From positions 181,523-245,522 of IMG/VR virus record IMGVR_UViG_3300025770_001492: DNA of 64,000 nt. The stretch is one strand, 5' to 3'. Below the pieces are notes generated by a model that saw nothing but the letters and a program-made list of their open reading frames with translations, ran no database searches and was not told the origin of the DNA. The position numbers were made by a program, and so were the translations under genes. Positions 1,424 through 25,321 of this stretch are shown here, in pieces. The stretch's first letter is position 1. The number at the start of each line of letters is the position of its first letter.

Positions 1424-2548
1424 ATGGTGGACAAAACCCCCAATGCAGTTGGAAGAGTTTTGCTGTTTTCTGATTTGCATATCCATCCTCACAAGCGAAA
1501 AACAGAACGTCTTGAGGATTGTCTAAAAGTTTTGGAATGGGTTTTCGATACTGCCATCGAACGAGGAATTGAAAACATTCTCTTTGGCGGCGATCTTTTC
1601 CATGACAGGCAAAAAATAGATGTCTTAACTTATCAGCGAACATTCGAGATATTTGACAAAAAGATATCAGAATGGAGAAAGGGCAACGGCGAAGCCAAAA
1701 TTTGGCTTTTGTTGGGCAATCATGATTTGTGGCACCTTAAAAAACATGATGTGTCTAGCGTGTACCCCCTTGCTGCTATAGATGGCGTTGAAATTATTTC
1801 AGAACCCTGTACTCGAACTATTTGCTCGAACTCTGAGGGAGAAGAATTTCAGGTTAGCTTTCTTCCGTACACGCACAATCCGCCTGAAGATCTTGGAAAA
1901 ATAGAAAATAAGTCTGAGAACAAAGTTTTAGTCGGGCATATAGCAATTGATAATGCTGTCTGGAACAGACTCCACGGAACTCGTTCAGAAGTTTCAATTG
2001 AACACGATGGAGACATGATCAAAGTTGACACTAAAATATTTGACGGATGGAATCAGGTATTTCTAGGACACTACCACGCAGAGCAACAGTTGGATTTCAA
2101 TACTGAGTACATAGGAAGCCCTTTGCAGTTGAGTTTTGGAGAGGCTTTTCAACACAAACACATAGTCCAATTCGATTTAAAAAACAACGACAAAGAATAT
2201 ATCAGAAACACATTCAGTCCTCAGCATTTTATAATTCCAGAAGCCGATTTGGAAAAATATGTTTTAGATAATAATTTTATCAGAGTTCTTGTGGAAGATA
2301 TATCTGATTCTAAAACTATAGAGATGAGGCAAAAGCTGACTGAAGACAACGATGTCGGCAGTTTGGAAATTCAGCAATCATCAAAGAAAAAAGAAGAACA
2401 CATAGTCGAGGATGCTAAGGCTATTTTGTTCAAAGAAGAAGAAATGTTAGATCAATACGTTGATGAAGTAGAGAAGGGTTCTGGTTTGGACACACTGGAA
2501 AAAGAACATCTGCTAGAAATTGGTAAGAATATATTACAGTCAGAGTAA
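1424..2548 (+). CDS. Mre11/SbcD-like metallophosphoesterase nuclease (T4 gp47-like)
   Basis: SDLH, GGDLFH, GNHD, GHYH motifs; next to the Rad50-like ATPase. Confidence 0.92.
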   Translation: MVDKTPNAVGRVLLFSDLHIHPHKRKTERLEDCLKVLEWVFDTAIERGIENILFGGDLFHDRQKIDVLTYQRTFEIFDKKISEWRKGNGEAKIWLLLGNHDLWHLKKHDVSSVYPLAAIDGVEIISEPCTRTICSNSEGEEFQVSFLPYTHNPPEDLGKIENKSENKVLVGHIAIDNAVWNRLHGTRSEVSIEHDGDMIKVDTKIFDGWNQVFLGHYHAEQQLDFNTEYIGSPLQLSFGEAFQHKHIVQFDLKNNDKEYIRNTFSPQHFIIPEADLEKYVLDNNFIRVLVEDISDSKTIEMRQKLTEDNDVGSLEIQQSSKKKEEHIVEDAKAILFKEEEMLDQYVDEVEKGSGLDTLEKEHLLEIGKNILQSE

Positions 2549-2557
2549 GATTTTAAA

Positions 2558-3430
2558 ATGAAAGACGCAATAATTTCTTGGGCTAGTGGTTACGATTTCT
2601 GCCGCTTACCGGAATTCAATATATTTCTAAACTCTATTAGAAGATCTGGCTTCAAGGGCGACGTTGTTCTGTTTAGTCACGATCTCGATGATGAAATCCA
2701 TGACAAATTTTTGTCAATGGACTACAAGATAGTGATGACGGAGAAAGATAGAGTTCATTTGGTTGTAAGAGACAGGTTTTTACTGCTTTATGAATGGCTA
2801 ATAAAGAACGGGGACAATTATGACAACATCATAATGACAGACTCAAAAGACGTACTCTTCCAAAAAAATCCTTCTGACTACTTTTACATGAGGCAACTTT
2901 GTGCAGAAGGTGACAGGCCATTCACGAATCTGGGTGAAGAACAATCAATGAGCCACCAAGAACTTGAGAAATACGTTCTTTTGTGTTGCGAGGGAAGTGT
3001 CCACTACAAAAGCGAATGGAATTCTCAGAATCAAATTCGACTGCAAATGAATGTAGATGAATTCAAAATGCCTTTTATTAAAAGGCCAATAATTAATTCT
3101 GGATTCATCGCAGGAAGTCCAGAAGAATTGAAAAATCTATGTTTATTAATGTGGTCAAATTCTATCAGAACTGTTACAAAATTAAGTGAACAGGCAACTC
3201 TTAATTATCTTTATTTCTTTTTAGAGAAAGACCCCATTTACAAGCTTTATTATCCTCAAGACGATCCGTTTTGCTTGACAGGAGAAGGCGTTAAGCAAGG
3301 GTGGGTTGAATGTACAAAAATGAAAAAAGACGGATTAGTTTACAATTCTGAAACGGATATGCCTTACTTTGCTTTCCACCAATGGGAAAGAACCCAATAT
3401 AGAGATGAAATAATGGAGATGTATTCATGA
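2558..3430 (+). CDS. Putative GT-A-fold glycosyltransferase-like protein
   Basis: IMTDSKDVLFQKNP (DxxD), INSGFIAG, EQATLNY. Confidence 0.55.
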   Translation: MKDAIISWASGYDFCRLPEFNIFLNSIRRSGFKGDVVLFSHDLDDEIHDKFLSMDYKIVMTEKDRVHLVVRDRFLLLYEWLIKNGDNYDNIIMTDSKDVLFQKNPSDYFYMRQLCAEGDRPFTNLGEEQSMSHQELEKYVLLCCEGSVHYKSEWNSQNQIRLQMNVDEFKMPFIKRPIINSGFIAGSPEELKNLCLLMWSNSIRTVTKLSEQATLNYLYFFLEKDPIYKLYYPQDDPFCLTGEGVKQGWVECTKMKKDGLVYNSETDMPYFAFHQWERTQYRDEIMEMYS

Positions 3431-5460
3431 TAGATCTGAAATTTAACTTTGTTGCAGCACAAAACTTTCTTTGTTTTGGGCCTGAAGGTATTGAGGTAGA
3501 CCTTACAGAATACGGAAATATCATTTTGATTCGTGGAGAAAACATGGATGTTTTCGAAGAAGAAGAGAAAGTGTCTTCAAATGGCGTTGGGAAGTCCTCA
3601 ATACCAGAAACGATTGTGTATACCCTTTATGGCAAAACAATAAAGCAACCCAACAAATTAAGTCACAATAATGTGATTAATAATAAGACTGGGAAGAAAT
3701 TAAGAACAGAGGCCAGATGGGATAACTTTAGAGTTATTAGAACTAGAAAGCCTGATTCATTGAGAATTTGGGAGTCTCCAGACGGAGATTGGAGTCAAAT
3801 TGATAATGAAGGATGGGCAGACCAACATGAGATTTCTTTAGGAGGCATGCCCGCTACTCAGAAGTTAATAGAAGAAAAGATTGGTTTAAACTATCAAACA
3901 TTTGTCAATGTGGCTGTCTTTACAGACAATAACTCTGGATCTTTTTTAGAATGCGATACTCCAACTAAACGTCAAATCGTAGAAAACTTATTAAGCTTAG
4001 ACAAATATAGGCATTATTCTGAGACCGCTAAAAAGTCTAGAAATGAATTTAAAGAAAATATAAAATTAATTTCATCTGAGTATGATCGAGTTCTTGGTGA
4101 TAAAACATCGTGCGACAATAGGTTAAAGCAAGCGAAAGAAGAAGAAGTATCTTGGAAAAAAGATAAAGAACAAGAGATAGTCACATTAAAGGCTTTTATA
4201 GAAAAAACAAAGTTAAAATTAGCCGAAACGGATTTGGGCGATGCGATTAATGAATACAGAAGTGCCCAAGAGGAAATAGAGACCATTGATTTGTCAATTA
4301 AAGAAAAAGATTCAGTTCTAGCAAAGGTTAAGACTTTGTTGGACAAGGCTACCGAAAAGTTAAATTCTGAATCTGTTTTAAAAAATGATTCGTTTAATAA
4401 AATAAACTCACTATCAAGCTCTATAGCATCTTTGCAACGAGAAGTTTCTAAAAATGAAAAAACTATAGAAAATTATGAATCTAAGAAGGACACCAAATGC
4501 CCCACATGCTTGGGATTTGTCAAAGAAGAAAATTACATTTCTTTAGTAGATTCATGTAAAGAGATTATATCATCGAAGAATTCAGAGATAAACAATCTCA
4601 CAACGCAAAAGAACACAGAAGATGCGGCTTTTCAAAAACAAGAATCTTCGATATCTAAAATAAACGAAAGCATAAATACTGGACAAAACCATTATCGTTT
4701 ACATTCAAAGCAGATAGACGACTTTAGAAATAGAAGATCTATCTTAGAGAAGATAGAAAAGCCAGAAGGCGATGTTCAAACAGCGGTTTTAACTTCTAAA
4801 ATAGATGAATCAAAAAAACAAATAGTAAATATAGAAGAGCAAATAAAAGGAACGTCTCCCTATGAAGCAATCATCAAGAGATGTAAAGAAGAGTTTTTAA
4901 GCAAAGAAAAGGAATGTTTATCTAAAAGAACAGAATTGAAAAAAGCTGAGAAAGAATTGCCTTACTATGAATTCTGGGTTAAAGCTTTTGGAGATTCTGG
5001 AATTAGGAAGATTGTAGTAGACGGCATAGTGCCAGCACTTAACTCTAGAGTGTCCCATTGGTTACAATTTTTAATTGATGGAAAAATTTCTTTATCTTTC
5101 AACAATCAGTTTGAAGAAACCATTGATAGAAATCCAAAAGATGGCGATCCTTTTGTTTACTACGCAATGAGCGGCGGCGAAAGGAGAAGGCTTAATTTAG
5201 CTGTTTCTCAAGCGTTTGCACACGTCATGATGCTTAACTCTGGGGCTTCACCATCTTTAGTATTTTTGGATGAAGTTACCACAAACATCGACCCAATTGG
5301 TGTCCAAGGCGTCTACAATATGATTGTCGAACTATCGAATCATAAACAAGTCTTTGTTACAACTCATGACCATGATTTATTGGACATGTTATCTGGTTGT
5401 AAAAGTATTAATTTAAAGAAAATTAACGGATTCACAACGCTCTGTGATGACCGTAATTAA
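3427..5460 (+). CDS. Rad50/SbcC-like ABC ATPase (T4 gp46-like)
   Basis: Walker A NGVGKSS, zinc hook CPTC within coiled coil, signature MSGGE, Walker B LVFLDE, H-loop TTH. Confidence 0.93.
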   Translation: MIDLKFNFVAAQNFLCFGPEGIEVDLTEYGNIILIRGENMDVFEEEEKVSSNGVGKSSIPETIVYTLYGKTIKQPNKLSHNNVINNKTGKKLRTEARWDNFRVIRTRKPDSLRIWESPDGDWSQIDNEGWADQHEISLGGMPATQKLIEEKIGLNYQTFVNVAVFTDNNSGSFLECDTPTKRQIVENLLSLDKYRHYSETAKKSRNEFKENIKLISSEYDRVLGDKTSCDNRLKQAKEEEVSWKKDKEQEIVTLKAFIEKTKLKLAETDLGDAINEYRSAQEEIETIDLSIKEKDSVLAKVKTLLDKATEKLNSESVLKNDSFNKINSLSSSIASLQREVSKNEKTIENYESKKDTKCPTCLGFVKEENYISLVDSCKEIISSKNSEINNLTTQKNTEDAAFQKQESSISKINESINTGQNHYRLHSKQIDDFRNRRSILEKIEKPEGDVQTAVLTSKIDESKKQIVNIEEQIKGTSPYEAIIKRCKEEFLSKEKECLSKRTELKKAEKELPYYEFWVKAFGDSGIRKIVVDGIVPALNSRVSHWLQFLIDGKISLSFNNQFEETIDRNPKDGDPFVYYAMSGGERRRLNLAVSQAFAHVMMLNSGASPSLVFLDEVTTNIDPIGVQGVYNMIVELSNHKQVFVTTHDHDLLDMLSGCKSINLKKINGFTTLCDDRN

Positions 5461-14429: not shown

Positions 14430-15161
14430 CTAGTATATCTGTACCTGCTGCTTGTCTGAAATATGTACAGTGTCACCAAAATCCATCTGAAACCAAACGT
14501 TATAAATCCCACAATCCATCTCAGTCGTGTCAAGGTAATAGTACCCAACACATTTCTCTCTAAGCTCTACAAGTTCGCAATCTACTACTAATCTGAGGTC
14601 CTGTTCAGCAGGCATACATTCTCCACACTCTTGTTCGATAGACACTTTAAGAGGAGACACTATAGCTAAGTTTTGATAATACCTATTCAGATCGCTAGTC
14701 TTAGGGACATTTGGAGTAATGTCTATTATTAAATAATTTTTTGAACCTTGTCTAATTTTATTTGGTCTAAAAGAAAAATCAAATCCATACACAACAGGAA
14801 CAGGAGAAGTGAACCAAAGGTCAGGAAAGATTTCAAAGCTGTTCTCAATCTGAGCCTCAGTTTCGCCAGATTCAACCTCAACAGTCCAGACATCTGAATA
14901 CCTTCCTATTGTGTAGACTGCTTGCTCCAATTCAACAGATGTTGAATATTGTCCAGTAGAATCAAGGCTAACATCTGCCGACTCTATAGTTTGAACTAAC
15001 CTTTTGCCATCTGGATTCGCTGCTGTTTTTTCGTCATCAAAAGCGTATATTTCCACCTTAGTGACAGAATTAAAATTACGATAGTTATTTGAATTATATG
15101 CAAATACTCGTAATTTTAATTCATCACCGACAACGGGGTTTTGAAATCTTTCTTTAGACAT
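14430..15161 (-). CDS. Hypothetical, probable baseplate/tail beta-sandwich protein
   Basis: Beta-rich and acidic; co-oriented downstream of the chaperone genes. Confidence 0.5.
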   Translation of the reverse strand: MSKERFQNPVVGDELKLRVFAYNSNNYRNFNSVTKVEIYAFDDEKTAANPDGKRLVQTIESADVSLDSTGQYSTSVELEQAVYTIGRYSDVWTVEVESGETEAQIENSFEIFPDLWFTSPVPVVYGFDFSFRPNKIRQGSKNYLIIDITPNVPKTSDLNRYYQNLAIVSPLKVSIEQECGECMPAEQDLRLVVDCELVELREKCVGYYYLDTTEMDCGIYNVWFQMDFGDTVHISDKQQVQIY

Positions 15162-15171
15162 TTAACTAACC

Positions 15172-15333
15172 TTATTTTTTAGCTTTTCTTCTAGCTGCTT
15201 CCATCGCTTCGTTTTCACGATTTTTTTGTTTTATAAATCGCTCAATTATCCACTTCCGTTCATTGACAGGTATTTGCAAACATTGTGCCCTGCCCATCCG
15301 AAGATGATACTGGAAGAAAAATATTTCTTCCAT
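15172..15333 (-). CDS. 53-aa ORF, gp51-like/tail-chaperone C-terminal part (not in ORF track)
   Basis: MEEIFFFQYHLRMGRAQCLQIPVNERKWIIERFIKQKNRENEAMEAARRKAKK; the frame stays open upstream to the slippery site. Confidence 0.75.
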   Translation of the reverse strand: MEEIFFFQYHLRMGRAQCLQIPVNERKWIIERFIKQKNRENEAMEAARRKAKK

Positions 15334-15377
15334 TAAGTTTTCCCAAAGAATAATCGACGGATCAGTTGCTAGTTCAC

Positions 15378-16481
15378 CTACTGGGTCGTTCGGGTTTTCT
15401 TCTTTGCCCTTGGGAAGAAAAAATTTGATTCCAAAGGCAGTTCTACCTCAAATTCCTCCATTGTGAATGGGCTTGTAATTTCAACCGTTGTGTCTACACC
15501 AAAAGGCGGCTCATTCACAGAATTTCTAAGGTAGGAAACATCATTGACTGAAAGTCTCTTGAGCAATTCTAGAATTTCATGCTGATTAGTCAGACCTTCT
15601 AGGTCTGTAATTAAAAGCGAAGTCCTATAGAGAAGAGTATCGTCAGCTTGTTCTACGCCTCCAAATTCCTTGTTCTTTCTTTCTCTGTATTCTTGAACTT
15701 TGATGTCATCCGTTCCAGTTGCCAATCTGTAAGAGAAGTTAAGGCCACTAGTTGGAAGCGTGTCTCCTAAGCTGTTCAAATCAAAGTCATAAGGGCATTC
15801 ATCTACAAACAAGCTGTTTAAATCAATCACGGTGGAAAACTTTTTATTTGTAAAAGGACACGTAAGCTGTACGTCGTATTCTGGCGTATAGGATATGCCT
15901 CTTAGAAACAACAATAGATATGTTCTATCAGAACTGAGCCACTTGGATGTATCGAAATCATCCTGCATGCACTTTCTGAATATCATGTCAATAGCTTTTC
16001 CCTGCTTGACGAATCTCGGAGTGGCTAGAATTTGCTCTTCTGCACCTGTCATCGGACGGACCTTAACAACCCCATCAGTAGGACCATCTGTGCCATCATA
16101 GAATTTTCCCTTTGATGGCAAATTGATTTCTTCATAGTTGAAAGTTGCCCCTGATACAGCACTAATCAACTCTTCCAGCCGATTGCTTCCGGTAGTTCTC
16201 AGATTAGGAGAATCAGAATACTGTTGCTCTGGCCTTGGTTGAGGACCGTTTTTAGAGGGTCCTTGTTCGCCTTTTACGTTTTGCTGCGCTTGTAAAAACT
16301 GCTGAGGGACGCTCCCGGAAATAGAAACTCCTTTATCTCCAGCAGGTTGTTGCGGAGTTTCTCCCGTTTCGGCAGCAACAGCTTCACGAACAGCTTGCCC
16401 TGCATTCATTGGGTTATCACCAGATTCTACGTCTGATGGATTAACTGGTTGTCTGTCTTGACGGAATGTATCTTCTGCCAT
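15378..16481 (-). CDS. T4 gp26-like baseplate hub assembly / tail assembly chaperone
   Basis: INLPSKGKFY, VRPMTGAEEQIL, SDRTYLLLFLRGISY, LTCP. Confidence 0.8.
   Translation of the reverse strand: MAEDTFRQDRQPVNPSDVESGDNPMNAGQAVREAVAAETGETPQQPAGDKGVSISGSVPQQFLQAQQNVKGEQGPSKNGPQPRPEQQYSDSPNLRTTGSNRLEELISAVSGATFNYEEINLPSKGKFYDGTDGPTDGVVKVRPMTGAEEQILATPRFVKQGKAIDMIFRKCMQDDFDTSKWLSSDRTYLLLFLRGISYTPEYDVQLTCPFTNKKFSTVIDLNSLFVDECPYDFDLNSLGDTLPTSGLNFSYRLATGTDDIKVQEYRERKNKEFGGVEQADDTLLYRTSLLITDLEGLTNQHEILELLKRLSVNDVSYLRNSVNEPPFGVDTTVEITSPFTMEEFEVELPLESNFFFPRAKKKTRTTQ
15417..15423 (-). other. Candidate -1 programmed frameshift heptamer T TTT TTC
   Basis: Correctly phased X XXY YYZ; the -1 frame is open into 15172..15333. 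Confidence 0.7.
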
Positions 16482-20904: not shown

Positions 20905-21417
20905 TTATTGTGTTATTATGTAAGCTCTGTCGTATCTTAAGGTTAATTCGCAAACCACATGTTCGGAATCACCATAATCTAAATCTCCAAAGTCTACGCT
21001 TTGAGGATATAGGTTTTCGTATCGCCATATTTCTATAGGGTCGCCACAGCCACTTAGCATTGAAAGGTCCCCATTCTTTTTGAATCCTTCATTTGGCACG
21101 TCCCATTCCCCATTGTTGTTTCCGCCAGGGTTGTATATCTCCTGAATCCAGCCAAATATTGGATGATATTGTTTTGCCAAATCATATAACACTAGTGTTA
21201 TAGGTTTCCAATCGGGTTTCACGGGGTAATATATTGTTTCATTTAGATGTTGAGCTTCCTGTTCTTTGAAGTCTATAGAGGGCCTAGCAGATTTACTTGG
21301 AGGCAATGAGTTAACGCCTGATTGAGATATTCCTGGTATAGAAAACTCCCATCTAAACTTTTGCTTCCAGCATAAGCTTTTTCTTTCAAGTCCAAAATCA
21401 AGTCCCATATTAGCCAT
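20905..21417 (-). CDS. Tail tube protein (T4 gp19-like), paralog 2
   Basis: KFRWEF, ARPSI, WKPITLVLYD, YPQSVDFGDLDY, LTLRYD. Confidence 0.88.
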   Translation of the reverse strand: MANMGLDFGLERKSLCWKQKFRWEFSIPGISQSGVNSLPPSKSARPSIDFKEQEAQHLNETIYYPVKPDWKPITLVLYDLAKQYHPIFGWIQEIYNPGGNNNGEWDVPNEGFKKNGDLSMLSGCGDPIEIWRYENLYPQSVDFGDLDYGDSEHVVCELTLRYDRAYIITQ

Positions 21418-22201
21418 TTTTGTATCCCAATTCTTGCATGTAAGTTTTTAATTTTGAGTATTTTTCAAACATCTCGTTTTTTCTTTTGTCGCCAAGTTTA
21501 AAATCTCTTTCATCATCTGGAGAAGCTTTATGGATAACTTTCCATTCTGAGATAAATTTATCTGTTTCAGTCGTTTTTAGTTCTCCTAAAAATCTTAAAA
21601 GATCGCAAATTATTTCTTCTTTTTCTTCATTGCTTTTTTGCGACAACTTATCTATTTGAAACAAAAAAGATTCATTATTGCTTTTGTAAAATTCATAAGA
21701 TTTTATCCAAAGATCTATCCATTCTTCTAGATTTTGTTTTTTTACAAAAGTATTTTTTTGAGATTCAAAGGATAAAAAAGGATCTCTAATGCAAACTATC
21801 CACTTTGCGTTGTTCCAAACTCTTTTAAGAGTCTCAACTTCTTTTTTTCTTGCGCATAGCCATAATGCTTTGTGCCCCCATTTTGTTTGTCCTGGTTTTT
21901 GATTTCCGTATCCTGAAATAAATTCATAAATCATTTTTCTCCAAATTGATTCACACCTTTGCGGATTACTACCGGAGTAGTGTGGAATTGCATAGTCTTT
22001 AACCGTTTTGCTCTTGTTTGATTTTTCCCCCCACTCTCCAGCTTGTATCATTTTATCAAGCCATTGTGTACTTTCTTTCCAAGATAACTTAGGCTCTTGC
22101 CCGTGTATGTATATGTTGGGGTGAGAGCATAAAAAAAATTGCATCCATGTGGTTCCACTTCGAGGCGGTCCAGTTATGACTATAGGGTTATCGTATTGCA
22201 T
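21410..22201 (-). CDS. Sulfotransferase-family protein
   Basis: 5'-PSB ITGPPRSGTT; 3'-PB CIRDPFLS. Confidence 0.85.
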   Translation of the reverse strand: MQYDNPIVITGPPRSGTTWMQFFLCSHPNIYIHGQEPKLSWKESTQWLDKMIQAGEWGEKSNKSKTVKDYAIPHYSGSNPQRCESIWRKMIYEFISGYGNQKPGQTKWGHKALWLCARKKEVETLKRVWNNAKWIVCIRDPFLSFESQKNTFVKKQNLEEWIDLWIKSYEFYKSNNESFLFQIDKLSQKSNEEKEEIICDLLRFLGELKTTETDKFISEWKVIHKASPDDERDFKLGDKRKNEMFEKYSKLKTYMQELGYKNG

Positions 22202-22214
22202 GTGTTTATATAGT

Positions 22215-22250
22215 AAAAAAAGCCTGTGTTTGAAAAAACACAGGCTTTTC
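22215..22250. terminator. Intrinsic terminator after tube paralog 1
   Basis: agcctgtgttt-gaaa-aaacacaggct flanked by A/T tracts. Confidence 0.8.
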
Positions 22251-22283
22251 TTATGGCCGGAAGTAAAACATGTTGTAGGAGTT

Positions 22284-22877
22284 CTAGCTAACTGTTCCTA
22301 GTACAGTTCCTCCAGATGTACCAGTACAAGGACCACAACAGCTTTGTGGCGTGTAACCAGGACAAACTGATCTATAATCAACCGAAGCATATCTCAACGT
22401 TAGCTCGATTGTTGACTCTTCGGAACTAGAATAGTCTAGTTCTCCAAAGTTCATGGCTGTTGGCCACATATCGTTCAATACCCAAGTTTCGAGAACGTTT
22501 CCACAACCGTCAAACAGGTTGAGCGTTCCACGACCAGAGTAGTGAATTCTTTGAGATCCCTGCTTAAGGGCGACAGGATCTGTAAATTCATAGACACTGG
22601 CAAGCCAGTTCCATAAAGGTGCGTTATCTATAGTAGCAACGTCATAGTATGTTACTGTAATTGTTTCCCAAGTCGCTTTGCCTGGAATAAAGGTCTTAGC
22701 GTTTTGGAAATTAATTTCCGTTTCTTCAATTGATAGGTTTGGTCTCGAAGCGATTTTAACAAAGTGTTCTTCAACGGATTGTCCACCGCAAATTTCATCT
22801 ACACGAAAAGTCCAACGGAACTTTCTCTTGAAGATCAATTGAGAACCACCTAATTTTCCAATTCCCATGTTTGCCAT
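22284..22877 (-). CDS. Tail tube protein (T4 gp19-like), paralog 1
   Basis: KFRWTF, SRPNL, WETITVTYYD, WPTAMNFGELDY, LTLRY; Cys-rich C-terminal tail. Confidence 0.92.
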   Translation of the reverse strand: MANMGIGKLGGSQLIFKRKFRWTFRVDEICGGQSVEEHFVKIASRPNLSIEETEINFQNAKTFIPGKATWETITVTYYDVATIDNAPLWNWLASVYEFTDPVALKQGSQRIHYSGRGTLNLFDGCGNVLETWVLNDMWPTAMNFGELDYSSSEESTIELTLRYASVDYRSVCPGYTPQSCCGPCTGTSGGTVLGTVS

Positions 22878-22924
22878 AATGTTAATTCTCCTAAATATTT
22901 AGATGATTTTTATTTCAACAAATA

Positions 22925-22949
22925 CCCCCTGCTCAGGACGAGCAGGGGG
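22925..22949. terminator. GC-rich hairpin between sheath and tube genes
   Basis: ccccctgctc-aggac-gagcaggggg; weak U tract. Confidence 0.6.
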
Positions 22950-22963
22950 GATCTATCTATTTT

Positions 22964-25321
22964 TTAGAACGTGTCAGCATTCTCTGCGAAGCTGCCAGTT
23001 CTGTGAACGCTGAATTCTATAAACATAAATTCAACGGCTCTTGTTGGTTGAACACCGATTCTCGCTCGGAACTCATTTCGATCTATTACATCTGGTGTGT
23101 TAAGCTCTTCATCGGCTTGGATGATGAAGTCGGTTAAACCACGACCAATTTGAACTTCTCTAAGAATTTCAGTTGAAATGTCAACAAATCTTTGTCTAAA
23201 GACTTCGTCATGTGGATCGAAAAGTAAACCTCTCGAAGCTTGTCTAATTCTCTTTTCAAGAACAAAGAGAAGCCTTCTGACATTAACACGATCCAGTGCT
23301 GTAGGTCTTCTTTGAAGAGTCTTTTGACCCCATACAAGGAAACCATCAAAATCGCTAAAGTTCACGATAGGATTAACAGCGTTTCTATTTCCGTACATTA
23401 AGTCTCTTTCTTCAAGAGTTGGACGGGAATAAACATCTGAAATTCCAGGAACGATACCACGATTTGCACCAGCGGGAGCAAACCAAGGTTCTGCTAATTG
23501 ATCACTTCTTGCATAAACTGCCATCACTGACCCAGATGGTGGAACCCAAACATCTACTCTATTGAAGTTGTCTCTTACCTTGACCCAAGGCCAGTAAAGA
23601 GCACCAAAGTCACTATCAAATCTAGTAGTGTTTAGAGGGTGAGCACCGTTCTGCCATTGAACTATTTCATCAACAGTTAGACCGAATGGTGGGTCTATCA
23701 ACGCCAGACAATCCTGTCTAAAGTTTTCACAAACGTCCAGCATAGCAAGAACGATTGATGTAGATGGATGACCTGGAACAGCAATCAAATCAATGTCGAT
23801 TTGCTCTGGCTCAGATAAGGCATAAAGCCCACTGTATGACAGAGAGTTTCCAATGATTAGAGCATCTTGATCGTCTGGATCTGATGGAATTCCATCACTA
23901 CCGCCTGCAAGGCTGTATGTTCCATCCAGTGGCGGTGCAAGAGTGGCTGTGTTGTCTTGAACACGAACCCAATCTGATACCAATGTCAGGAATGTTTCTA
24001 CGTAGAACCTACTAGAGGAATCTTTAACAAGGTTGCCCCAAGATTCTACTTGATTGGAATCATTGTAGACATCCATAGTGAAAACGCCTTCTCTAGTATC
24101 GTTTTTAATAACGACTTGAGTTGCGTTTCCATCAACACCAGCACTATCTGCTGTAAGGGTGAAACTGTTAGTACTGGCAACAGAGTTTCCAGTTACAATT
24201 CCGTATGTTTCAACAGCAGCATCTCCGCTTACACCAGATGGGCTTGCACCCTCTGCTGTGACACCATCAAAATCAAACAATGAAGCAGCGGTGCTTTCTG
24301 TTTTGATTAAGAGTCGTGCGTCTCGTCCGTGATGCAGAGTTTGAAGCGTTAGGTTGTCACCAGTTGCAACAGCTTCAAATCCGCCAGGAATATCTCCATT
24401 AGTAATTTGAAGATTGATTTCCGTTAGAACTTCAAGAGTTGTTTTTTCTGCACCTTCTAGAACGGCCAAGTCAACAACTTGAACCACATTGTCGATAAGA
24501 ACATTGTCTGTTCCGTCAACAACAATTAAAAGCTGAAGATTAGAAAGACCAGTGAAGTCCCATTCTCCTGGTCCTTGATATCCATCTACTGGATATCTGT
24601 CTTCGCCAGAAGTAGAAGCAGCAATAGTCATTCCTGTTCCTAGTCCTGTTACAGAACTAGAACCACCATAGATAGCATCTTGAACAGATACCAGTTCTAA
24701 AGAAGCGTCTGGTCCATATGCGAATGTGCTTTCGACTGCAATTCTATTTGATCCGTCGCATGTGAACTGAATTCCGTCAACTGTTGAATCGAGTTGATCA
24801 TTTAAAGCTTCTGCCAGATCTTCACATGTGTATGGGCCTGGTGTTGTTCTGTTGGCGTCTGCCAACACAACCAAAGTTTTAGATGCTAAAACTCCATTCA
24901 GTTTCCAGCGGAAAAATGAATCGTCGCCAAACGAATATGTTTCTGCTGTGTCTGATTGAATTATGATTTGACCACCTGCAACAGGTACGTCAAATTCAGC
25001 AGTAGTGGCACGTTCGTCACTGACTGCGTCTTGGTCGCCAACTCTAACTACGTATAGTTCGTTAGCAACTAATAAATATTGCTCGGCAGCGTAAATCAAG
25101 TAGGGATCACCACTCTCAGGATGTGGATATCCAAATACTGTGTGTAGTTCTCTACTTGTTCTCACAACAGTAGGAATATTAATTGGGCCTTTACTTGCAA
25201 ACCCAACTAATCCTGCTCTGTGAAAAGACTGCTCAGGAGCAATAAAAGATAAATCTTTTTCAGCAATTCGAACGCTTGGTGAAATTGTGTTCGAAGGCGG
25301 AAATCCCCTTAATATCGCCAT
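22964..25321 (-). CDS. Contractile tail sheath protein (T4 gp18-like)
   Basis: SPSVRIAEKDLS, LYWPWVKV, VPPSG, WFAPAG, GQKTL, RVNVRRL, PTRAVEF. Confidence 0.95.
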   Translation of the reverse strand: MAILRGFPPSNTISPSVRIAEKDLSFIAPEQSFHRAGLVGFASKGPINIPTVVRTSRELHTVFGYPHPESGDPYLIYAAEQYLLVANELYVVRVGDQDAVSDERATTAEFDVPVAGGQIIIQSDTAETYSFGDDSFFRWKLNGVLASKTLVVLADANRTTPGPYTCEDLAEALNDQLDSTVDGIQFTCDGSNRIAVESTFAYGPDASLELVSVQDAIYGGSSSVTGLGTGMTIAASTSGEDRYPVDGYQGPGEWDFTGLSNLQLLIVVDGTDNVLIDNVVQVVDLAVLEGAEKTTLEVLTEINLQITNGDIPGGFEAVATGDNLTLQTLHHGRDARLLIKTESTAASLFDFDGVTAEGASPSGVSGDAAVETYGIVTGNSVASTNSFTLTADSAGVDGNATQVVIKNDTREGVFTMDVYNDSNQVESWGNLVKDSSSRFYVETFLTLVSDWVRVQDNTATLAPPLDGTYSLAGGSDGIPSDPDDQDALIIGNSLSYSGLYALSEPEQIDIDLIAVPGHPSTSIVLAMLDVCENFRQDCLALIDPPFGLTVDEIVQWQNGAHPLNTTRFDSDFGALYWPWVKVRDNFNRVDVWVPPSGSVMAVYARSDQLAEPWFAPAGANRGIVPGISDVYSRPTLEERDLMYGNRNAVNPIVNFSDFDGFLVWGQKTLQRRPTALDRVNVRRLLFVLEKRIRQASRGLLFDPHDEVFRQRFVDISTEILREVQIGRGLTDFIIQADEELNTPDVIDRNEFRARIGVQPTRAVEFMFIEFSVHRTGSFAENADTF

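What the first reader, a model, noticed from the sequence alone, without database searches (positions are those of the whole stretch)
15172..15423. Programmed -1 frameshift joins the gp26-like chaperone to a hidden downstream ORF (G/GT-style)
Seen: ...TCA AAT TTT TTC TTC... gives a correctly phased T TTT TTC at 15423-15417, 13 codons before the frame-0 stop. The -1 frame reads FFLPKGKEENPNDPVGELATDPSIILWENL-MEEIFFFQYHL..., about 30 stop-free codons leading into the 53-aa ORF, which has no obvious RBS. Known: tail assembly chaperones use -1 shifts (lambda G/GT; P2 E/E' at a T6 run), whereas T4 encodes gp26 and gp51 separately. Inference: a T4-like jumbo phage makes short and extended chaperone forms by recoding.
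Basis: partly seen in the sequence, partly recalled or inferred. Interest (0 to 1): 0.75.

Follow-up and report, generated by a model that had tools for sequence, protein, structure and literature searches.

The report
Frameshift-extended tail chaperone in huge phage
A huge marine phage very probably makes a short and a long form of its T4 gp26-like tail/baseplate assembly chaperone by letting ribosomes slip back one base at a strictly conserved U UUU UUC, the same trick lambda uses for G/GT; phage T4 seems to get the same two forms from two separate genes, 26 and 51.

Summary
On the minus strand a 367-aa gp26-like gene (PF12322) carries an in-phase T_TTT_TTC at 15423-15417. The -1 frame stays open for 81 codons through the 53-aa ORF.

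The heptamer alone is ordinary: the window has 179 in-phase slippery heptamers. The comparative data are not ordinary.
- All 113 distinct relatives (46-100% identity) keep T_TTT_TTC, with zero synonymous variation, and an open -1 frame.
- 51 of 110 have no ATG where the window's small ORF starts, and 27 have no ATG/GTG/TTG anywhere upstream of that point.
- The predicted first helix of the extension begins 9 residues before that ATG.
- One relative has lost the heptamer. It carries instead a second, tandem copy fused in frame to the extension, with the predicted FF|LP junction.

The same arrangement occurs in other groups:
- 80 of 80 T4-like cyanophage loci, where the small ORF is annotated "gp51-like".
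- Jumbo phages Atu_ph07, RsoM2USA and Xoo-sp13.
- Bacterial sheath-tube-PF12322-tape-measure loci.

T4 gp51 is itself PF12322 plus a C-terminal domain that is homologous, by a chain of profile matches, to this extension.

Verdict: a G/GT-style programmed -1 frameshift, new member of a known kind, apparently unannotated. No protein or reporter evidence exists.

The parts
15378..16481 (-). Frame-0 gene: gp26-like baseplate-hub/tail assembly chaperone, 367 aa (short form). The N-terminal ~95 aa are predicted disordered; the folded core is residues ~98-360.
   Evidence: PF12322 T4_baseplate 45.4 bits against a cut-off of 24.5; phrog_150 'baseplate hub' E 7e-16. AF2 model pLDDT 74 overall, core mostly above 85. 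The model matches 'baseplate hub (assembly) protein' models of many myoviruses and no solved structure.
15417..15423 (-). Slippery heptamer U_UUU_UUC (codons AAT TTT TTC), the proposed -1 shift site. An overlapping A_AAU_UUU lies one codon upstream.
   Evidence: In phase. Identical in 113 of 113 distinct relatives. Third-position entropy is 0.00 at AAT, TTT and TTC, against 0.93-1.06 at other invariant Phe/Asn codons of the same gene. The same heptamer is present in 80 of 80 cyanophage loci.
15378..15416 (-). Overlap zone read in two frames: frame 0 gives FPRAKKKTRTTQ-stop, frame -1 gives LPKGKEENPNDPV.
   Evidence: The frame-0 tail (FFFP[RK]-basic-..TQA*) and the frame -1 start (LP...DPS) are both conserved across relatives.
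15361..15417 (-). Linker of the -1 extension (residues 1-19). Length varies among relatives and it is predicted disordered.
   Evidence: Alignment A5 shows indels here; AF2 pLDDT is 53-59.
15175..15360 (-). Folded part of the -1 extension (residues 20-81): helix 20-39, short helix 43-47, long basic helix 51-80. It is DUF6760-like and transitively related to the C-terminal domain of T4 gp51. The stop codon is at 15174-15172.
   Evidence: AF2 pLDDT 94-97. Best AFDB matches are DUF6760 proteins (prob 1.0, TM 0.64/0.84). Pfam DUF6760 hits occur in 17 of 55 members, best E 1.7e-5 and below the curated cut-off. hhalign chain: A5-A6 97.8%, A6-A8 91.5%, A8-gp51 92.7%.
15172..15333 (-). The 53-aa 'ORF' of the finding: the last 53 codons of the extension, starting at an internal Met (residue 29 of the extension).
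   Evidence: The equivalent codon is ATG in 59 of 110 relatives and GCN/CTA/GAR/GTM/TTA/TTT in 51 of 110. Gene callers report it as a stand-alone hypothetical protein.
14430..15161 (-). Conserved downstream 243-aa gene of unknown function. It keeps its position after the gp26-like pair in relatives. It is context, not part of the recoding unit.
   Evidence: Homologs of 244-248 aa follow the pair in L001, L004 and L192. No Pfam or significant PHROG hit.

Best explanation
The gp26-like gene (16481..15378, minus strand) is a recoded gene.

Most ribosomes read frame 0 and terminate at 15380-15378, giving a 367-aa short form. A minority slip one base backwards while tRNA-Phe occupies UUU UUC in U_UUU_UUC (15423-15417). 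They continue in the -1 frame and terminate at 15174-15172. That gives a 436-aa long form: residues 1-355 plus 81 new residues, with junction ..ESNFF|LPKGK... The extension adds a flexible linker and a three-helix, basic, DUF6760-like domain.

By analogy with lambda G/GT and P2 E/E+E', and from the position of this gene pair in simpler relatives (sheath - tube - gp26-like - extension - tape measure), I infer that the two forms act together as assembly chaperones for the tape measure/central hub of the contractile tail.

What is shown: the sequence anatomy; its conservation at nucleotide level; coding-type conservation of the -1 frame upstream of any start codon; and the existence of natural two-gene equivalents (T4 genes 26 and 51; the tandem pair in L192).

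What is inferred: that the shift is ribosomal; its efficiency (probably a few per cent, since no stimulatory structure is apparent); and the chaperone function of both forms.
For: 1. Anatomy.

2. Huge-phage clade, 113 distinct junctions at 46-100% aa identity.
- The heptamer TTTTTTC is present in 113 of 113.
- The codon before it is AAT, AGT, GAT or GGT, always ending in T.
- The -1 frame is open 67-93 codons in every complete locus.
- Synonymous-site entropy is 0 at the three heptamer wobble positions, against about 1 at comparable Phe/Asn codons.

3. Independent initiation cannot explain the conserved N-terminal part of the domain.
- 51 of 110 relatives lack ATG at the window's start position, and 27 of 110 have no ATG/GTG/TTG between the heptamer and that position.
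- Codon-position periodicity persists upstream of it: entropy 1.15/0.57/1.44.
- The AF2 helix starts at extension residue 20, while the ATG is residue 29.
- There is no enrichment of SD pairing before ATG compared with non-ATG codons.

4. Natural control: contig L192.
- Gene 1 ends ..GFFFPIAKRETEEK* with codons GGG TTC TTT TTC (heptamer gone) and a closed -1 frame.
- Tandem gene 2 has a core 66% identical to gene 1 and runs in frame ..GFF-LPSPDSEKG.. into the extension.

5. Deep conservation.
- Atu_ph07 (CAT TTT TTC), RsoM2USA (GTT TTT TTT) and Xoo-sp13 (GCT TTT TTT) all have a -1 extension.
- Bacterial loci including the Sulfidibacter corallicola chromosome have GGT TTT TTG/A and a -1 extension of 55-58 aa. 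They lie between PF06841 tube plus PF12322 and a PF10145 tape measure of 1281 aa or more, and the extension stop overlaps the tape-measure ATG.
- 80 of 80 T4-like cyanophage loci have T_TTT_TTC and a -1 frame of 60-69 codons.

6. Extension homology: hhalign A5-A6 97.8% (E 7e-13), A6-A8 91.5%, A8-T4 gp51 C-terminus 92.7%. T4 gp51 residues 1-201 match PF12322 at E 4e-52.

7. Within the window this is the only one of 179 in-phase heptamers followed by a long -1 frame.
Against: - There is no direct evidence of the fusion protein. No proteomics or reporter data were available. The metatranscriptome contigs found do not cover the junction.
- No conserved downstream stem-loop or pseudoknot was found. 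Mean z of the 70 nt after the heptamer is -0.47. RNAalifold gives -1.0 kcal/mol with no covariation. No upstream SD-like element was seen either. Efficiency may therefore be low, and the stimulator, if any, is unknown.
- In the window the small ORF does have its own ATG with weak SD-like pairing (-4.2 kcal/mol), so some independent initiation cannot be excluded here.
- In this phage the pair is not adjacent to a tape measure gene. No PF10145 match exists in the 245-kb record, which is estimated 49% complete.
- The gp26-like fold does not resemble any solved structure, including tail assembly chaperones.
- The direct profile match between the window's extension family and T4 gp51 is not significant, nor is the match to the cyanophage extension. 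The link is transitive.
Confidence: 0.85

Rival explanations
1. Two separate genes. The 53-aa ORF is translated on its own from ATG 15333, possibly by re-initiation of ribosomes that terminated 44 nt upstream. It acts as a small free 'gp51-like' protein. The heptamer and the open frame are by-products of a conserved FFF motif in an AT-rich genome.
For: - The window has an in-frame ATG with weak SD-like pairing (-4.2 kcal/mol).
- 59 of 110 relatives keep ATG there.
- In L001 the frame-0 stop overlaps an ATG (TAATG).
- Databases and cyanophage records annotate the small ORF as a stand-alone gene.
Against: - 51 of 110 relatives have a non-start codon there, and 27 of 110 have no canonical start upstream.
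- Residues upstream of the ATG are conserved as protein and belong to helix 1.
- A conserved FFF motif does not explain zero variation at two purely synonymous sites in 105 sequences, while other invariant Phe codons vary freely. It also does not explain a preceding codon drawn from different boxes (AGT, TCT, GCT) that always ends in T.
- The only relative lacking the heptamer has an in-frame fused paralog.
Confidence: 0.06
2. The long form arises by transcriptional slippage. RNA polymerase stutters on the T6 (U6) run, so a fraction of mRNAs carry an extra or missing U. Those mRNAs place the extension in frame; the ribosome does not shift.
For: - The shift site is always a homopolymeric T run: T6 in most cases, T7 in Xoo-sp13 and Mel-JY01, T9 in RsoM2USA.
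- Some relatives have the extension in the +1 frame at the same T run. Stuttering by one base in either direction could serve both cases.
Against: - From general knowledge, efficient slippage by bacterial-type RNA polymerases usually needs runs of about 8-9 or more. Six is short.
- The strict phase of the run (X_XXY_YYZ, with the preceding codon always ending in T) is what tandem tRNA slippage needs. Polymerase stuttering would not need it.
- The last base varies (C/T/G/A) while the phase is kept.
- RNA data over the junction were not available, so this is not excluded.
Confidence: 0.07
3. Artefact or decay. A homopolymer sequencing/assembly error, or a recent frameshift mutation, split one longer gene.
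For: T-run length errors are common. One database protein (P0264) looks like a garbled read-through from an error-prone assembly.
Against: - Identical T6 runs occur in 113 independently assembled relatives and in 80 cyanophage loci, including isolate genomes.
- The frame-0 tail after the heptamer is itself conserved, as is its stop (..TQA*).
- At least 15 sequencing runs hold 91-100% of the sampled 31-mers of the window's 2.1-kb stretch.
Confidence: 0.01

Closest known systems
Lambda G/GT and the conserved tail-assembly-chaperone frameshift of long-tailed phages (Levin et al. 1993; Xu, Hendrix and Duda 2004, as cited in PMC2147016)
   Same: - Two overlapping frames with a slippery heptamer near the 3' end of the first.
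- A -1 shift yields a long form that shares the whole short form.
- No stimulatory structure is needed (own knowledge for lambda).
- In simpler relatives the pair sits between the tube and tape measure genes.
- T4 gp26 and gp51 are listed as hub assembly chaperones, and gp51 is reported absent from the final particle (PMC3004832).
   Different: - The protein family and fold are different: PF12322, about 250 aa, alpha/beta, with a Cys-rich motif in many members. Lambda G is a small helical protein.
- The heptamer is U_UUU_UUC rather than G_GGA_AAG.
- In the window the pair is separated from the tail tube genes by about 4 kb of other genes, and no tape measure gene is adjacent.
Phage P2 E/E+E' (own knowledge: Christie et al. 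2002, -1 shift at TTTTTTG upstream of tape measure gene T)
   Same: Contractile-tailed phage, a T6-run heptamer and a -1 extension. The bacterial PF12322 loci use exactly T_TTT_TTG/A directly before the tape measure gene.
   Different: P2 E is a small protein of another family. No sequence or fold relation was tested or seen here.
T4 gene 26 / gene 51 (baseplate hub assembly chaperones)
   Same: - Same Pfam family: the window protein, T4 gp26 and T4 gp51 all match PF12322.
- gp51 is the PF12322 domain plus a ~48-aa C-terminal domain that matches the cyanophage -1 extension.
- So gp26 corresponds to the short form and gp51 to the long form.
   Different: - T4 has no heptamer (GAG TTC TTT GAG) and no extension after gene 26; gene 25 follows directly.
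- The two forms come from two diverged, divergently transcribed genes.
- T4 additionally makes gp26' from an internal start (annotated in NC_000866).
- The direct profile match of the window's extension to gp51 is not significant.
[quoted passage not shown]
   Same: It is a precedent for replacing the G/GT frameshift by two paralogous genes that share a domain. The tandem pair in L192 and T4 26/51 look like the same solution.
   Different: The proteins belong to a different family; no homology was tested.

Membership tests
T4 gp26/gp51 family (Pfam PF12322 T4_baseplate; phrog_150) | Significant match to the family profile above the curated threshold | tested here: met
   45.4 bits against a cut-off of 24.5 (E 1e-11); phrog_150 E 7e-16. 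The AF2 model matches 'baseplate hub (assembly)' models at E down to 2e-19.
T4 gp26/gp51 family (Pfam PF12322 T4_baseplate; phrog_150) | Required for hub assembly but absent from the virion (chaperone role) | not testable with these tools
   Known for T4 only (PMC3004832).
G/GT-type recoded tail assembly chaperone (Xu et al. 2004 criteria) | Slippery heptamer in phase near the 3' end of the upstream ORF | tested here: met
   T_TTT_TTC at 15423-15417, 13 codons before the stop. Invariant in 113 of 113 and 80 of 80 relatives.
G/GT-type recoded tail assembly chaperone (Xu et al. 2004 criteria) | Downstream ORF open in the shifted frame from the slip site, conserved as protein, without need of its own start | tested here: met
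   81 open codons in the window. Open in all complete relatives. 27 of 110 have no canonical start. Codon periodicity holds upstream of the Met.
G/GT-type recoded tail assembly chaperone (Xu et al. 2004 criteria) | Location between the tail tube gene and the tape measure gene | tested here: not met
   Not met in the window. The sheath gene (25321..22964) and two gp19-like genes (22877..22284, 21417..20905) lie upstream on the same strand, about 4 kb away with other genes between. The downstream gene is an unknown 243-aa ORF. No PF10145 match exists in the 245-kb record. The criterion is met in homologous loci of SP-15, Mel-JY01 (long unannotated ORF in the tape-measure slot), HSE3, LIS04 and Sulfidibacter.
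G/GT-type recoded tail assembly chaperone (Xu et al. 2004 criteria) | Both short and long products made in a fixed ratio, and both required | not testable with these tools
   Indirect support only: L192 and T4 keep both forms as separate genes.
Lambda gpG-like chaperone fold | Structural similarity to solved tail assembly chaperones | tested here: not met
   Foldseek against the PDB gave no match with E <= 0.001 for the gp26-like model. The extension model gives only weak helical-hairpin matches that include some 'tail assembly chaperone' entries at E > 0.7.
DUF6760 (PF20546) | Profile match above the curated cut-off (27 bits) | tested here: inconclusive
   The window extension scores 18.3 bits, E 0.0025, below the cut-off. 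17 of 55 family members hit, best E 1.7e-5. The top structural matches are DUF6760 proteins (prob 1.0).

The most novel reading that the evidence does not exclude
The PF12322 (gp26/gp51) family is the ancestral tail assembly chaperone of T4-type contractile tails and related bacterial tail-like loci.

Its short/long pair is so essential that lineages swap freely between three ways of making it:
- a -1 frameshift at U_UUU_UUN (huge phages, jumbo phages, T4-like cyanophages, bacterial loci);
- an apparent +1 shift at UUU-Y (SP-15, LIS04, HSE3, GXN1, Mel-JY01, LR756508);
- gene duplication with fusion (T4 genes 26 and 51; the tandem pair in L192).

This would give the long-enigmatic T4 gp51 'hub assembly catalyst' a concrete identity as the GT-equivalent. 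It would also mean that the 'gp51-like' small ORFs of hundreds of cyanophage genomes are mis-annotated frameshift extensions.
Probability: 0.55. Interest if true: 0.75.

Novelty: new member of a known kind. Interest (0 to 1): 0.62.

Why it matters
1. Annotation. The extension is filed everywhere as a stand-alone hypothetical or 'gp51-like' mini-gene, or not called at all (Atu_ph07, RsoM2USA, all 377 database hits). Recognising the recoding corrects the proteome of huge phages, jumbo phages and marine cyanomyoviruses.

2. Tail biology. It ties the T4 hub chaperones gp26 and gp51 to the universal G/GT logic of tail assembly. [quoted passage not shown] The link suggests testable roles, such as binding of the tape measure gp29 by the long form.

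3. Recoding. It offers a very clean natural data set: about 200 diverged sequences with an invariant U_UUU_UUC and no obvious stimulator, lineages that appear to use +1 instead, and lineages that replaced recoding by duplication. That is useful for studying how frameshift sites evolve and how much efficiency a bare heptamer gives.

Tried and rejected
- Downstream stimulatory RNA structure. A single-sequence fold (z -1.8) pairs the slip site itself with the purine-rich AAGAAGAAAA that follows. That cannot act while the ribosome sits on the site. Folding 110 relatives gave mean z -0.47. RNAalifold on 44 sequences found only a 6-bp UUCUUC/GAAGAR pairing, with no covariation and -1.0 kcal/mol. Rejected as evidence.
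- Direct homology of the window extension to T4 gp51. hhalign A2 against T4 gp51 gave prob 0.2, and A7 against A5 gave prob 0.2. Only the chain through A6 and A8 is significant.
- The Tma16 Pfam hits (39 of 55 members). I regard these as compositional matches of a basic helix and did not pursue them.
- PDB sequence searches with both profiles found nothing. Foldseek against the PDB found nothing for the gp26-like model.
- RNA evidence. Four RNA-library runs hold short contigs over parts of the gp26-like gene and of the downstream gene, but none over 15130-15638. Nothing can be said about U-run heterogeneity or co-transcription.
- tblastn of the extension against isolate phages found only LR756511.
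- Literature. Eight searches found no paper that links gp26, gp51 or the 'hub assembly catalyst' to a frameshift. The library holds open-access papers only, so prior description cannot be excluded.
I rebuilt it without that row and did not send the row elsewhere.
Full report
**1. What is there.**

On the minus strand, ORF 16481..15378 encodes 367 aa. It matches Pfam PF12322 'T4_baseplate' at 45.4 bits against a cut-off of 24.5. It also matches phrog_150 'baseplate hub'.

Its 3' end reads GAA TCA AAT TTT TTC TTC CCA AGG ... TAG. T(15423) TTT TTC(15417) is therefore an X_XXY_YYZ heptamer in the correct phase, 13 codons before the stop.

From 15417 the -1 frame is open for 81 codons and ends at TAA 15174-15172. 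The 53-aa ORF of the finding (15333..15172) is the last two thirds of that frame. A conserved 243-aa gene of unknown function follows (15161..14430).

The window belongs to a 245-kb virus record estimated to be 49% complete. Its closest relatives are contigs of 450-600 kb, including LR756511. This is a huge phage.

**2. Is it more than chance?**

Within the window alone the heptamer is unremarkable. There are 179 in-phase slippery heptamers in 69 genes of this 37% GC sequence. The median open -1 run after them is 6 codons. This is the only site whose -1 frame runs well past the frame-0 stop.

The decisive evidence is comparative. I fetched 160 related loci from IMG/VR and JGI metagenomes, giving 113 distinct junctions at 46-100% protein identity.
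- All 113 have TTTTTTC in phase.
- All complete loci have the -1 frame open for 67-93 codons, to the end of a conserved domain.
- In 105 non-redundant sequences, third-position entropy is 0.00 for the codon before the run (AAT, AGT, GAT or GGT, always ending in T), 0.00 for TTT and 0.00 for TTC.
- Two other invariant Phe codons of the same gene show 0.93 and 0.98, and an Asn codon shows 1.06.

Two of those sites are purely synonymous in both frames, so the constraint acts on the nucleotides.

**3. One protein or two?**

- The window's ATG 15333 is ATG in only 59 of 110 complete relatives. In 51 it is Ala, Leu, Glu, Val or Phe. In 27 there is no ATG, GTG or TTG anywhere between the heptamer and that position.
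- The peptide upstream of it (DPS-x-x-LW-x-x-L) is conserved.
- That stretch shows coding-type periodicity: entropy 1.15, 0.57 and 1.44 at codon positions 1-3.
- In an AF2 model with pLDDT 94-97, this peptide forms the first turns of helix 20-39 of the extension. The ATG is residue 29.
- Predicted SD pairing is no better before ATG than before non-ATG codons, and it is weaker than before the next gene.

**4. A natural control.**

A profile search of 1.8 billion proteins found P0233, 327 aa. It has PF12322 followed in frame by the extension, with junction ..GFF-LPSPD...

Its contig L192 carries two tandem PF12322 genes.
- Gene 1 (371 aa) ends ..GFFFPIAKRETEEK* with codons GGG TTC TTT TTC. The heptamer is gone and the -1 frame is closed.
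- Gene 2 has a core 66% identical to gene 1 and is fused in frame to the extension.
- The usual 244-aa gene follows.

So where a separate long-form gene exists, the synonymous constraint on the heptamer disappears. The fusion joint is also the one predicted for a -1 slip.

**5. How far does it reach?**

*-1 arrangement.*
- Atu_ph07 has CAT TTT TTC, RsoM2USA has GTT TTT TTT, and Xoo-sp13 has GCT TTT TTT. All have homologous -1 extensions, which are unannotated or annotated only in part.
- Bacterial loci were found in two Desulfobulbia contigs, two Holophagae contigs, one contig of an uncultured bacterium and the Sulfidibacter corallicola chromosome. In Sulfidibacter (L185) Pfam confirms the order sheath (PF04984), tube (PF06841), PF12322 ending in GGT TTT TTG, a -1 extension of 56 aa, then a PF10145 tape measure of at least 1281 aa. 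The tape-measure ATG there overlaps the extension's stop. The other five loci have GGT/TCT TTT TTG or TTA, a -1 extension of 55-58 aa and a tape-measure-like ORF start right after it.
- T4-like cyanophages Syn9 and P-SSM2 end gp26 with TCT/AGT TTT TTC. The -1 frame continues through the ORF that the Syn9 record calls 'baseplate hub assembly catalyst, T4 gp51-like'.
- In 80 further distinct cyanophage loci the heptamer is present in 80 of 80. The preceding codon is AGT, TCT or GCT, and the -1 frame is open 60-69 codons.

*+1 arrangement.* In SP-15, LIS04, HSE3, GXN1, Mel-JY01 and LR756508 the homologous extension lies in the +1 frame, next to TTT-C or TTT-T at the same FF motif.

*Position.* In SP-15, HSE3 and LIS04 the pair sits between the tube gene and an annotated tape measure gene. 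Mel-JY01 has the same order, with a long unannotated ORF in the tape-measure slot.

**6. The T4 connection.**

- T4 gene 26 ends GAG TTC TTT GAG TTA CTA TAA and is followed at once by gene 25. It has no heptamer and no extension.
- T4 gp51 is itself PF12322 over residues 1-201 (E 4e-52). It has an extra C-terminal domain that the precomputed annotation calls PF28602 in all gp51 homologs.
- Profile comparisons link the extensions:

| Comparison | hhalign probability | E-value |
|---|---|---|
| Huge-phage set A5 vs distant set A6 | 97.8% | 7e-13 |
| A6 vs cyanophage set A8 | 91.5% | 9e-7 |
| A8 vs gp51 residues 209-249 | 92.7% | 4e-7 |
| A5 vs gp51 (direct) | not significant | - |
| A5 vs A8 (direct) | not significant | - |

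The link from the window's extension to gp51 is therefore transitive. The simplest reading is that T4, like L192, makes the short and long forms from two genes.

**7. Mechanism.**

The best explanation is tandem -1 slippage of tRNA-Phe on U_UUU_UUC. It gives a 436-aa product with junction ..ESNFF|LPKGK...

No conserved stimulatory structure or SD-like element was found. By analogy with lambda G/GT, the efficiency is probably low and set by the heptamer alone.

Transcriptional slippage on the U6 run is not excluded. The metatranscriptome contigs found do not cover the junction. The strict codon phase of the run favours the ribosomal route.

The chaperone function rests on three things:
- family membership; a review lists T4 gp26 and gp51 as hub assembly chaperones (PMC3004832);
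- the tube-to-tape-measure position in simpler relatives;
- the absence of any solved structure with this fold.

**8. Novelty.**

Recoded tail assembly chaperones are a well-known kind (Xu et al. 2004, Levin et al. 1993, cited in PMC2147016). This is a new member, in a protein family not previously tied to recoding as far as eight literature searches could show. Current annotation misses it everywhere.

What raises its interest above routine is its breadth and the light it throws on T4 gp26/gp51. Direct protein evidence is still missing.

Noticed in passing
L168 (SP-15) 2190-2425; L171 (LIS04) 3130-3377; L170 (HSE3) 3190-3413; L172 (GXN1) 3215-3512; L167 (Mel-JY01) 2245-2479; L174 (LR756508) 3220-3506: In these phages the homologous extension lies in the +1 frame, not the -1 frame, of the gp26-like gene. 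It is open from the FF motif, next to TTT-C or TTT-T (e.g. GAA TTT TTT CAC, TTC TTT CGT, AAC TTT CTA). This suggests a +1 (or -2) shift, or an independent start in some (HSE3 has an ATG). The mechanism is unresolved.
   Followed up: partly
L192 383-2484 (Logan SRR17828886 contig 2442): Tandem duplication of the gp26-like gene. Copy 1 has no heptamer and a closed -1 frame. Copy 2 lacks the disordered N-terminus and is fused in frame to the extension. It is a two-gene replacement of the frameshift.
   Followed up: yes
L169 (T4) 4480-5229: T4 gp51 'hub assembly catalyst' is a full-length PF12322 paralog of gp26 plus a ~48-aa C-terminal domain (PF28602 in precomputed annotation). That domain matches the cyanophage -1 extension. 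Genes 26 and 51 are adjacent and divergently transcribed.
   Followed up: yes
L185 (Sulfidibacter corallicola NZ_CP071793) 4615-4795: In this bacterial tail-like locus the -1 extension ends in TGA within cgATGAtgg, so its stop overlaps the ATG of the tape measure gene. Tape-measure initiation may therefore be coupled to ribosomes that have frameshifted.
   Followed up: partly
window 20905-25321 (minus strand): The tail sheath gene is followed by two gp19-like tube paralogs (22877..22284 and 21417..20905), with a sulfotransferase-family gene (22201..21410) inserted between them.
   Followed up: no
window 15312-15321 and 15412-15421: The 10-nt string TTTTTCTTCC occurs twice: at the slip site (N-FFF-P in frame 0) and again in the extension (EEI-FFF-Q). 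Both forms of the protein therefore carry an acidic-x-FFF motif. RNAalifold pairs UUCUUC of the slip site with the GAAGAA just before the second copy, but without covariation.
   Followed up: partly
L166 (RsoM2USA MG752970) locus 2238-3640: About 1.4 kb after the gp26-like gene carries no annotated feature. The first ~250 nt encode the -1 extension.
   Followed up: partly
window 14430-15161 (minus strand): A 243-aa gene with no Pfam or significant PHROG match keeps its place right after the gp26-like pair in L001, L004 and L192. Xoo-sp13 has a 248-aa ORF in the same position (homology not tested). It may be another tail or baseplate component.
   Followed up: no
L176-L180 (genome contigs): Huge-phage contigs of up to 546 kb carrying this gene pair are filed inside MAGs labelled Bacteriovoracaceae, Chloracidobacterium, Acidimicrobiaceae, 'archaeon' and Neisseriaceae. 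These are probably binning artefacts rather than host assignments.
   Followed up: no
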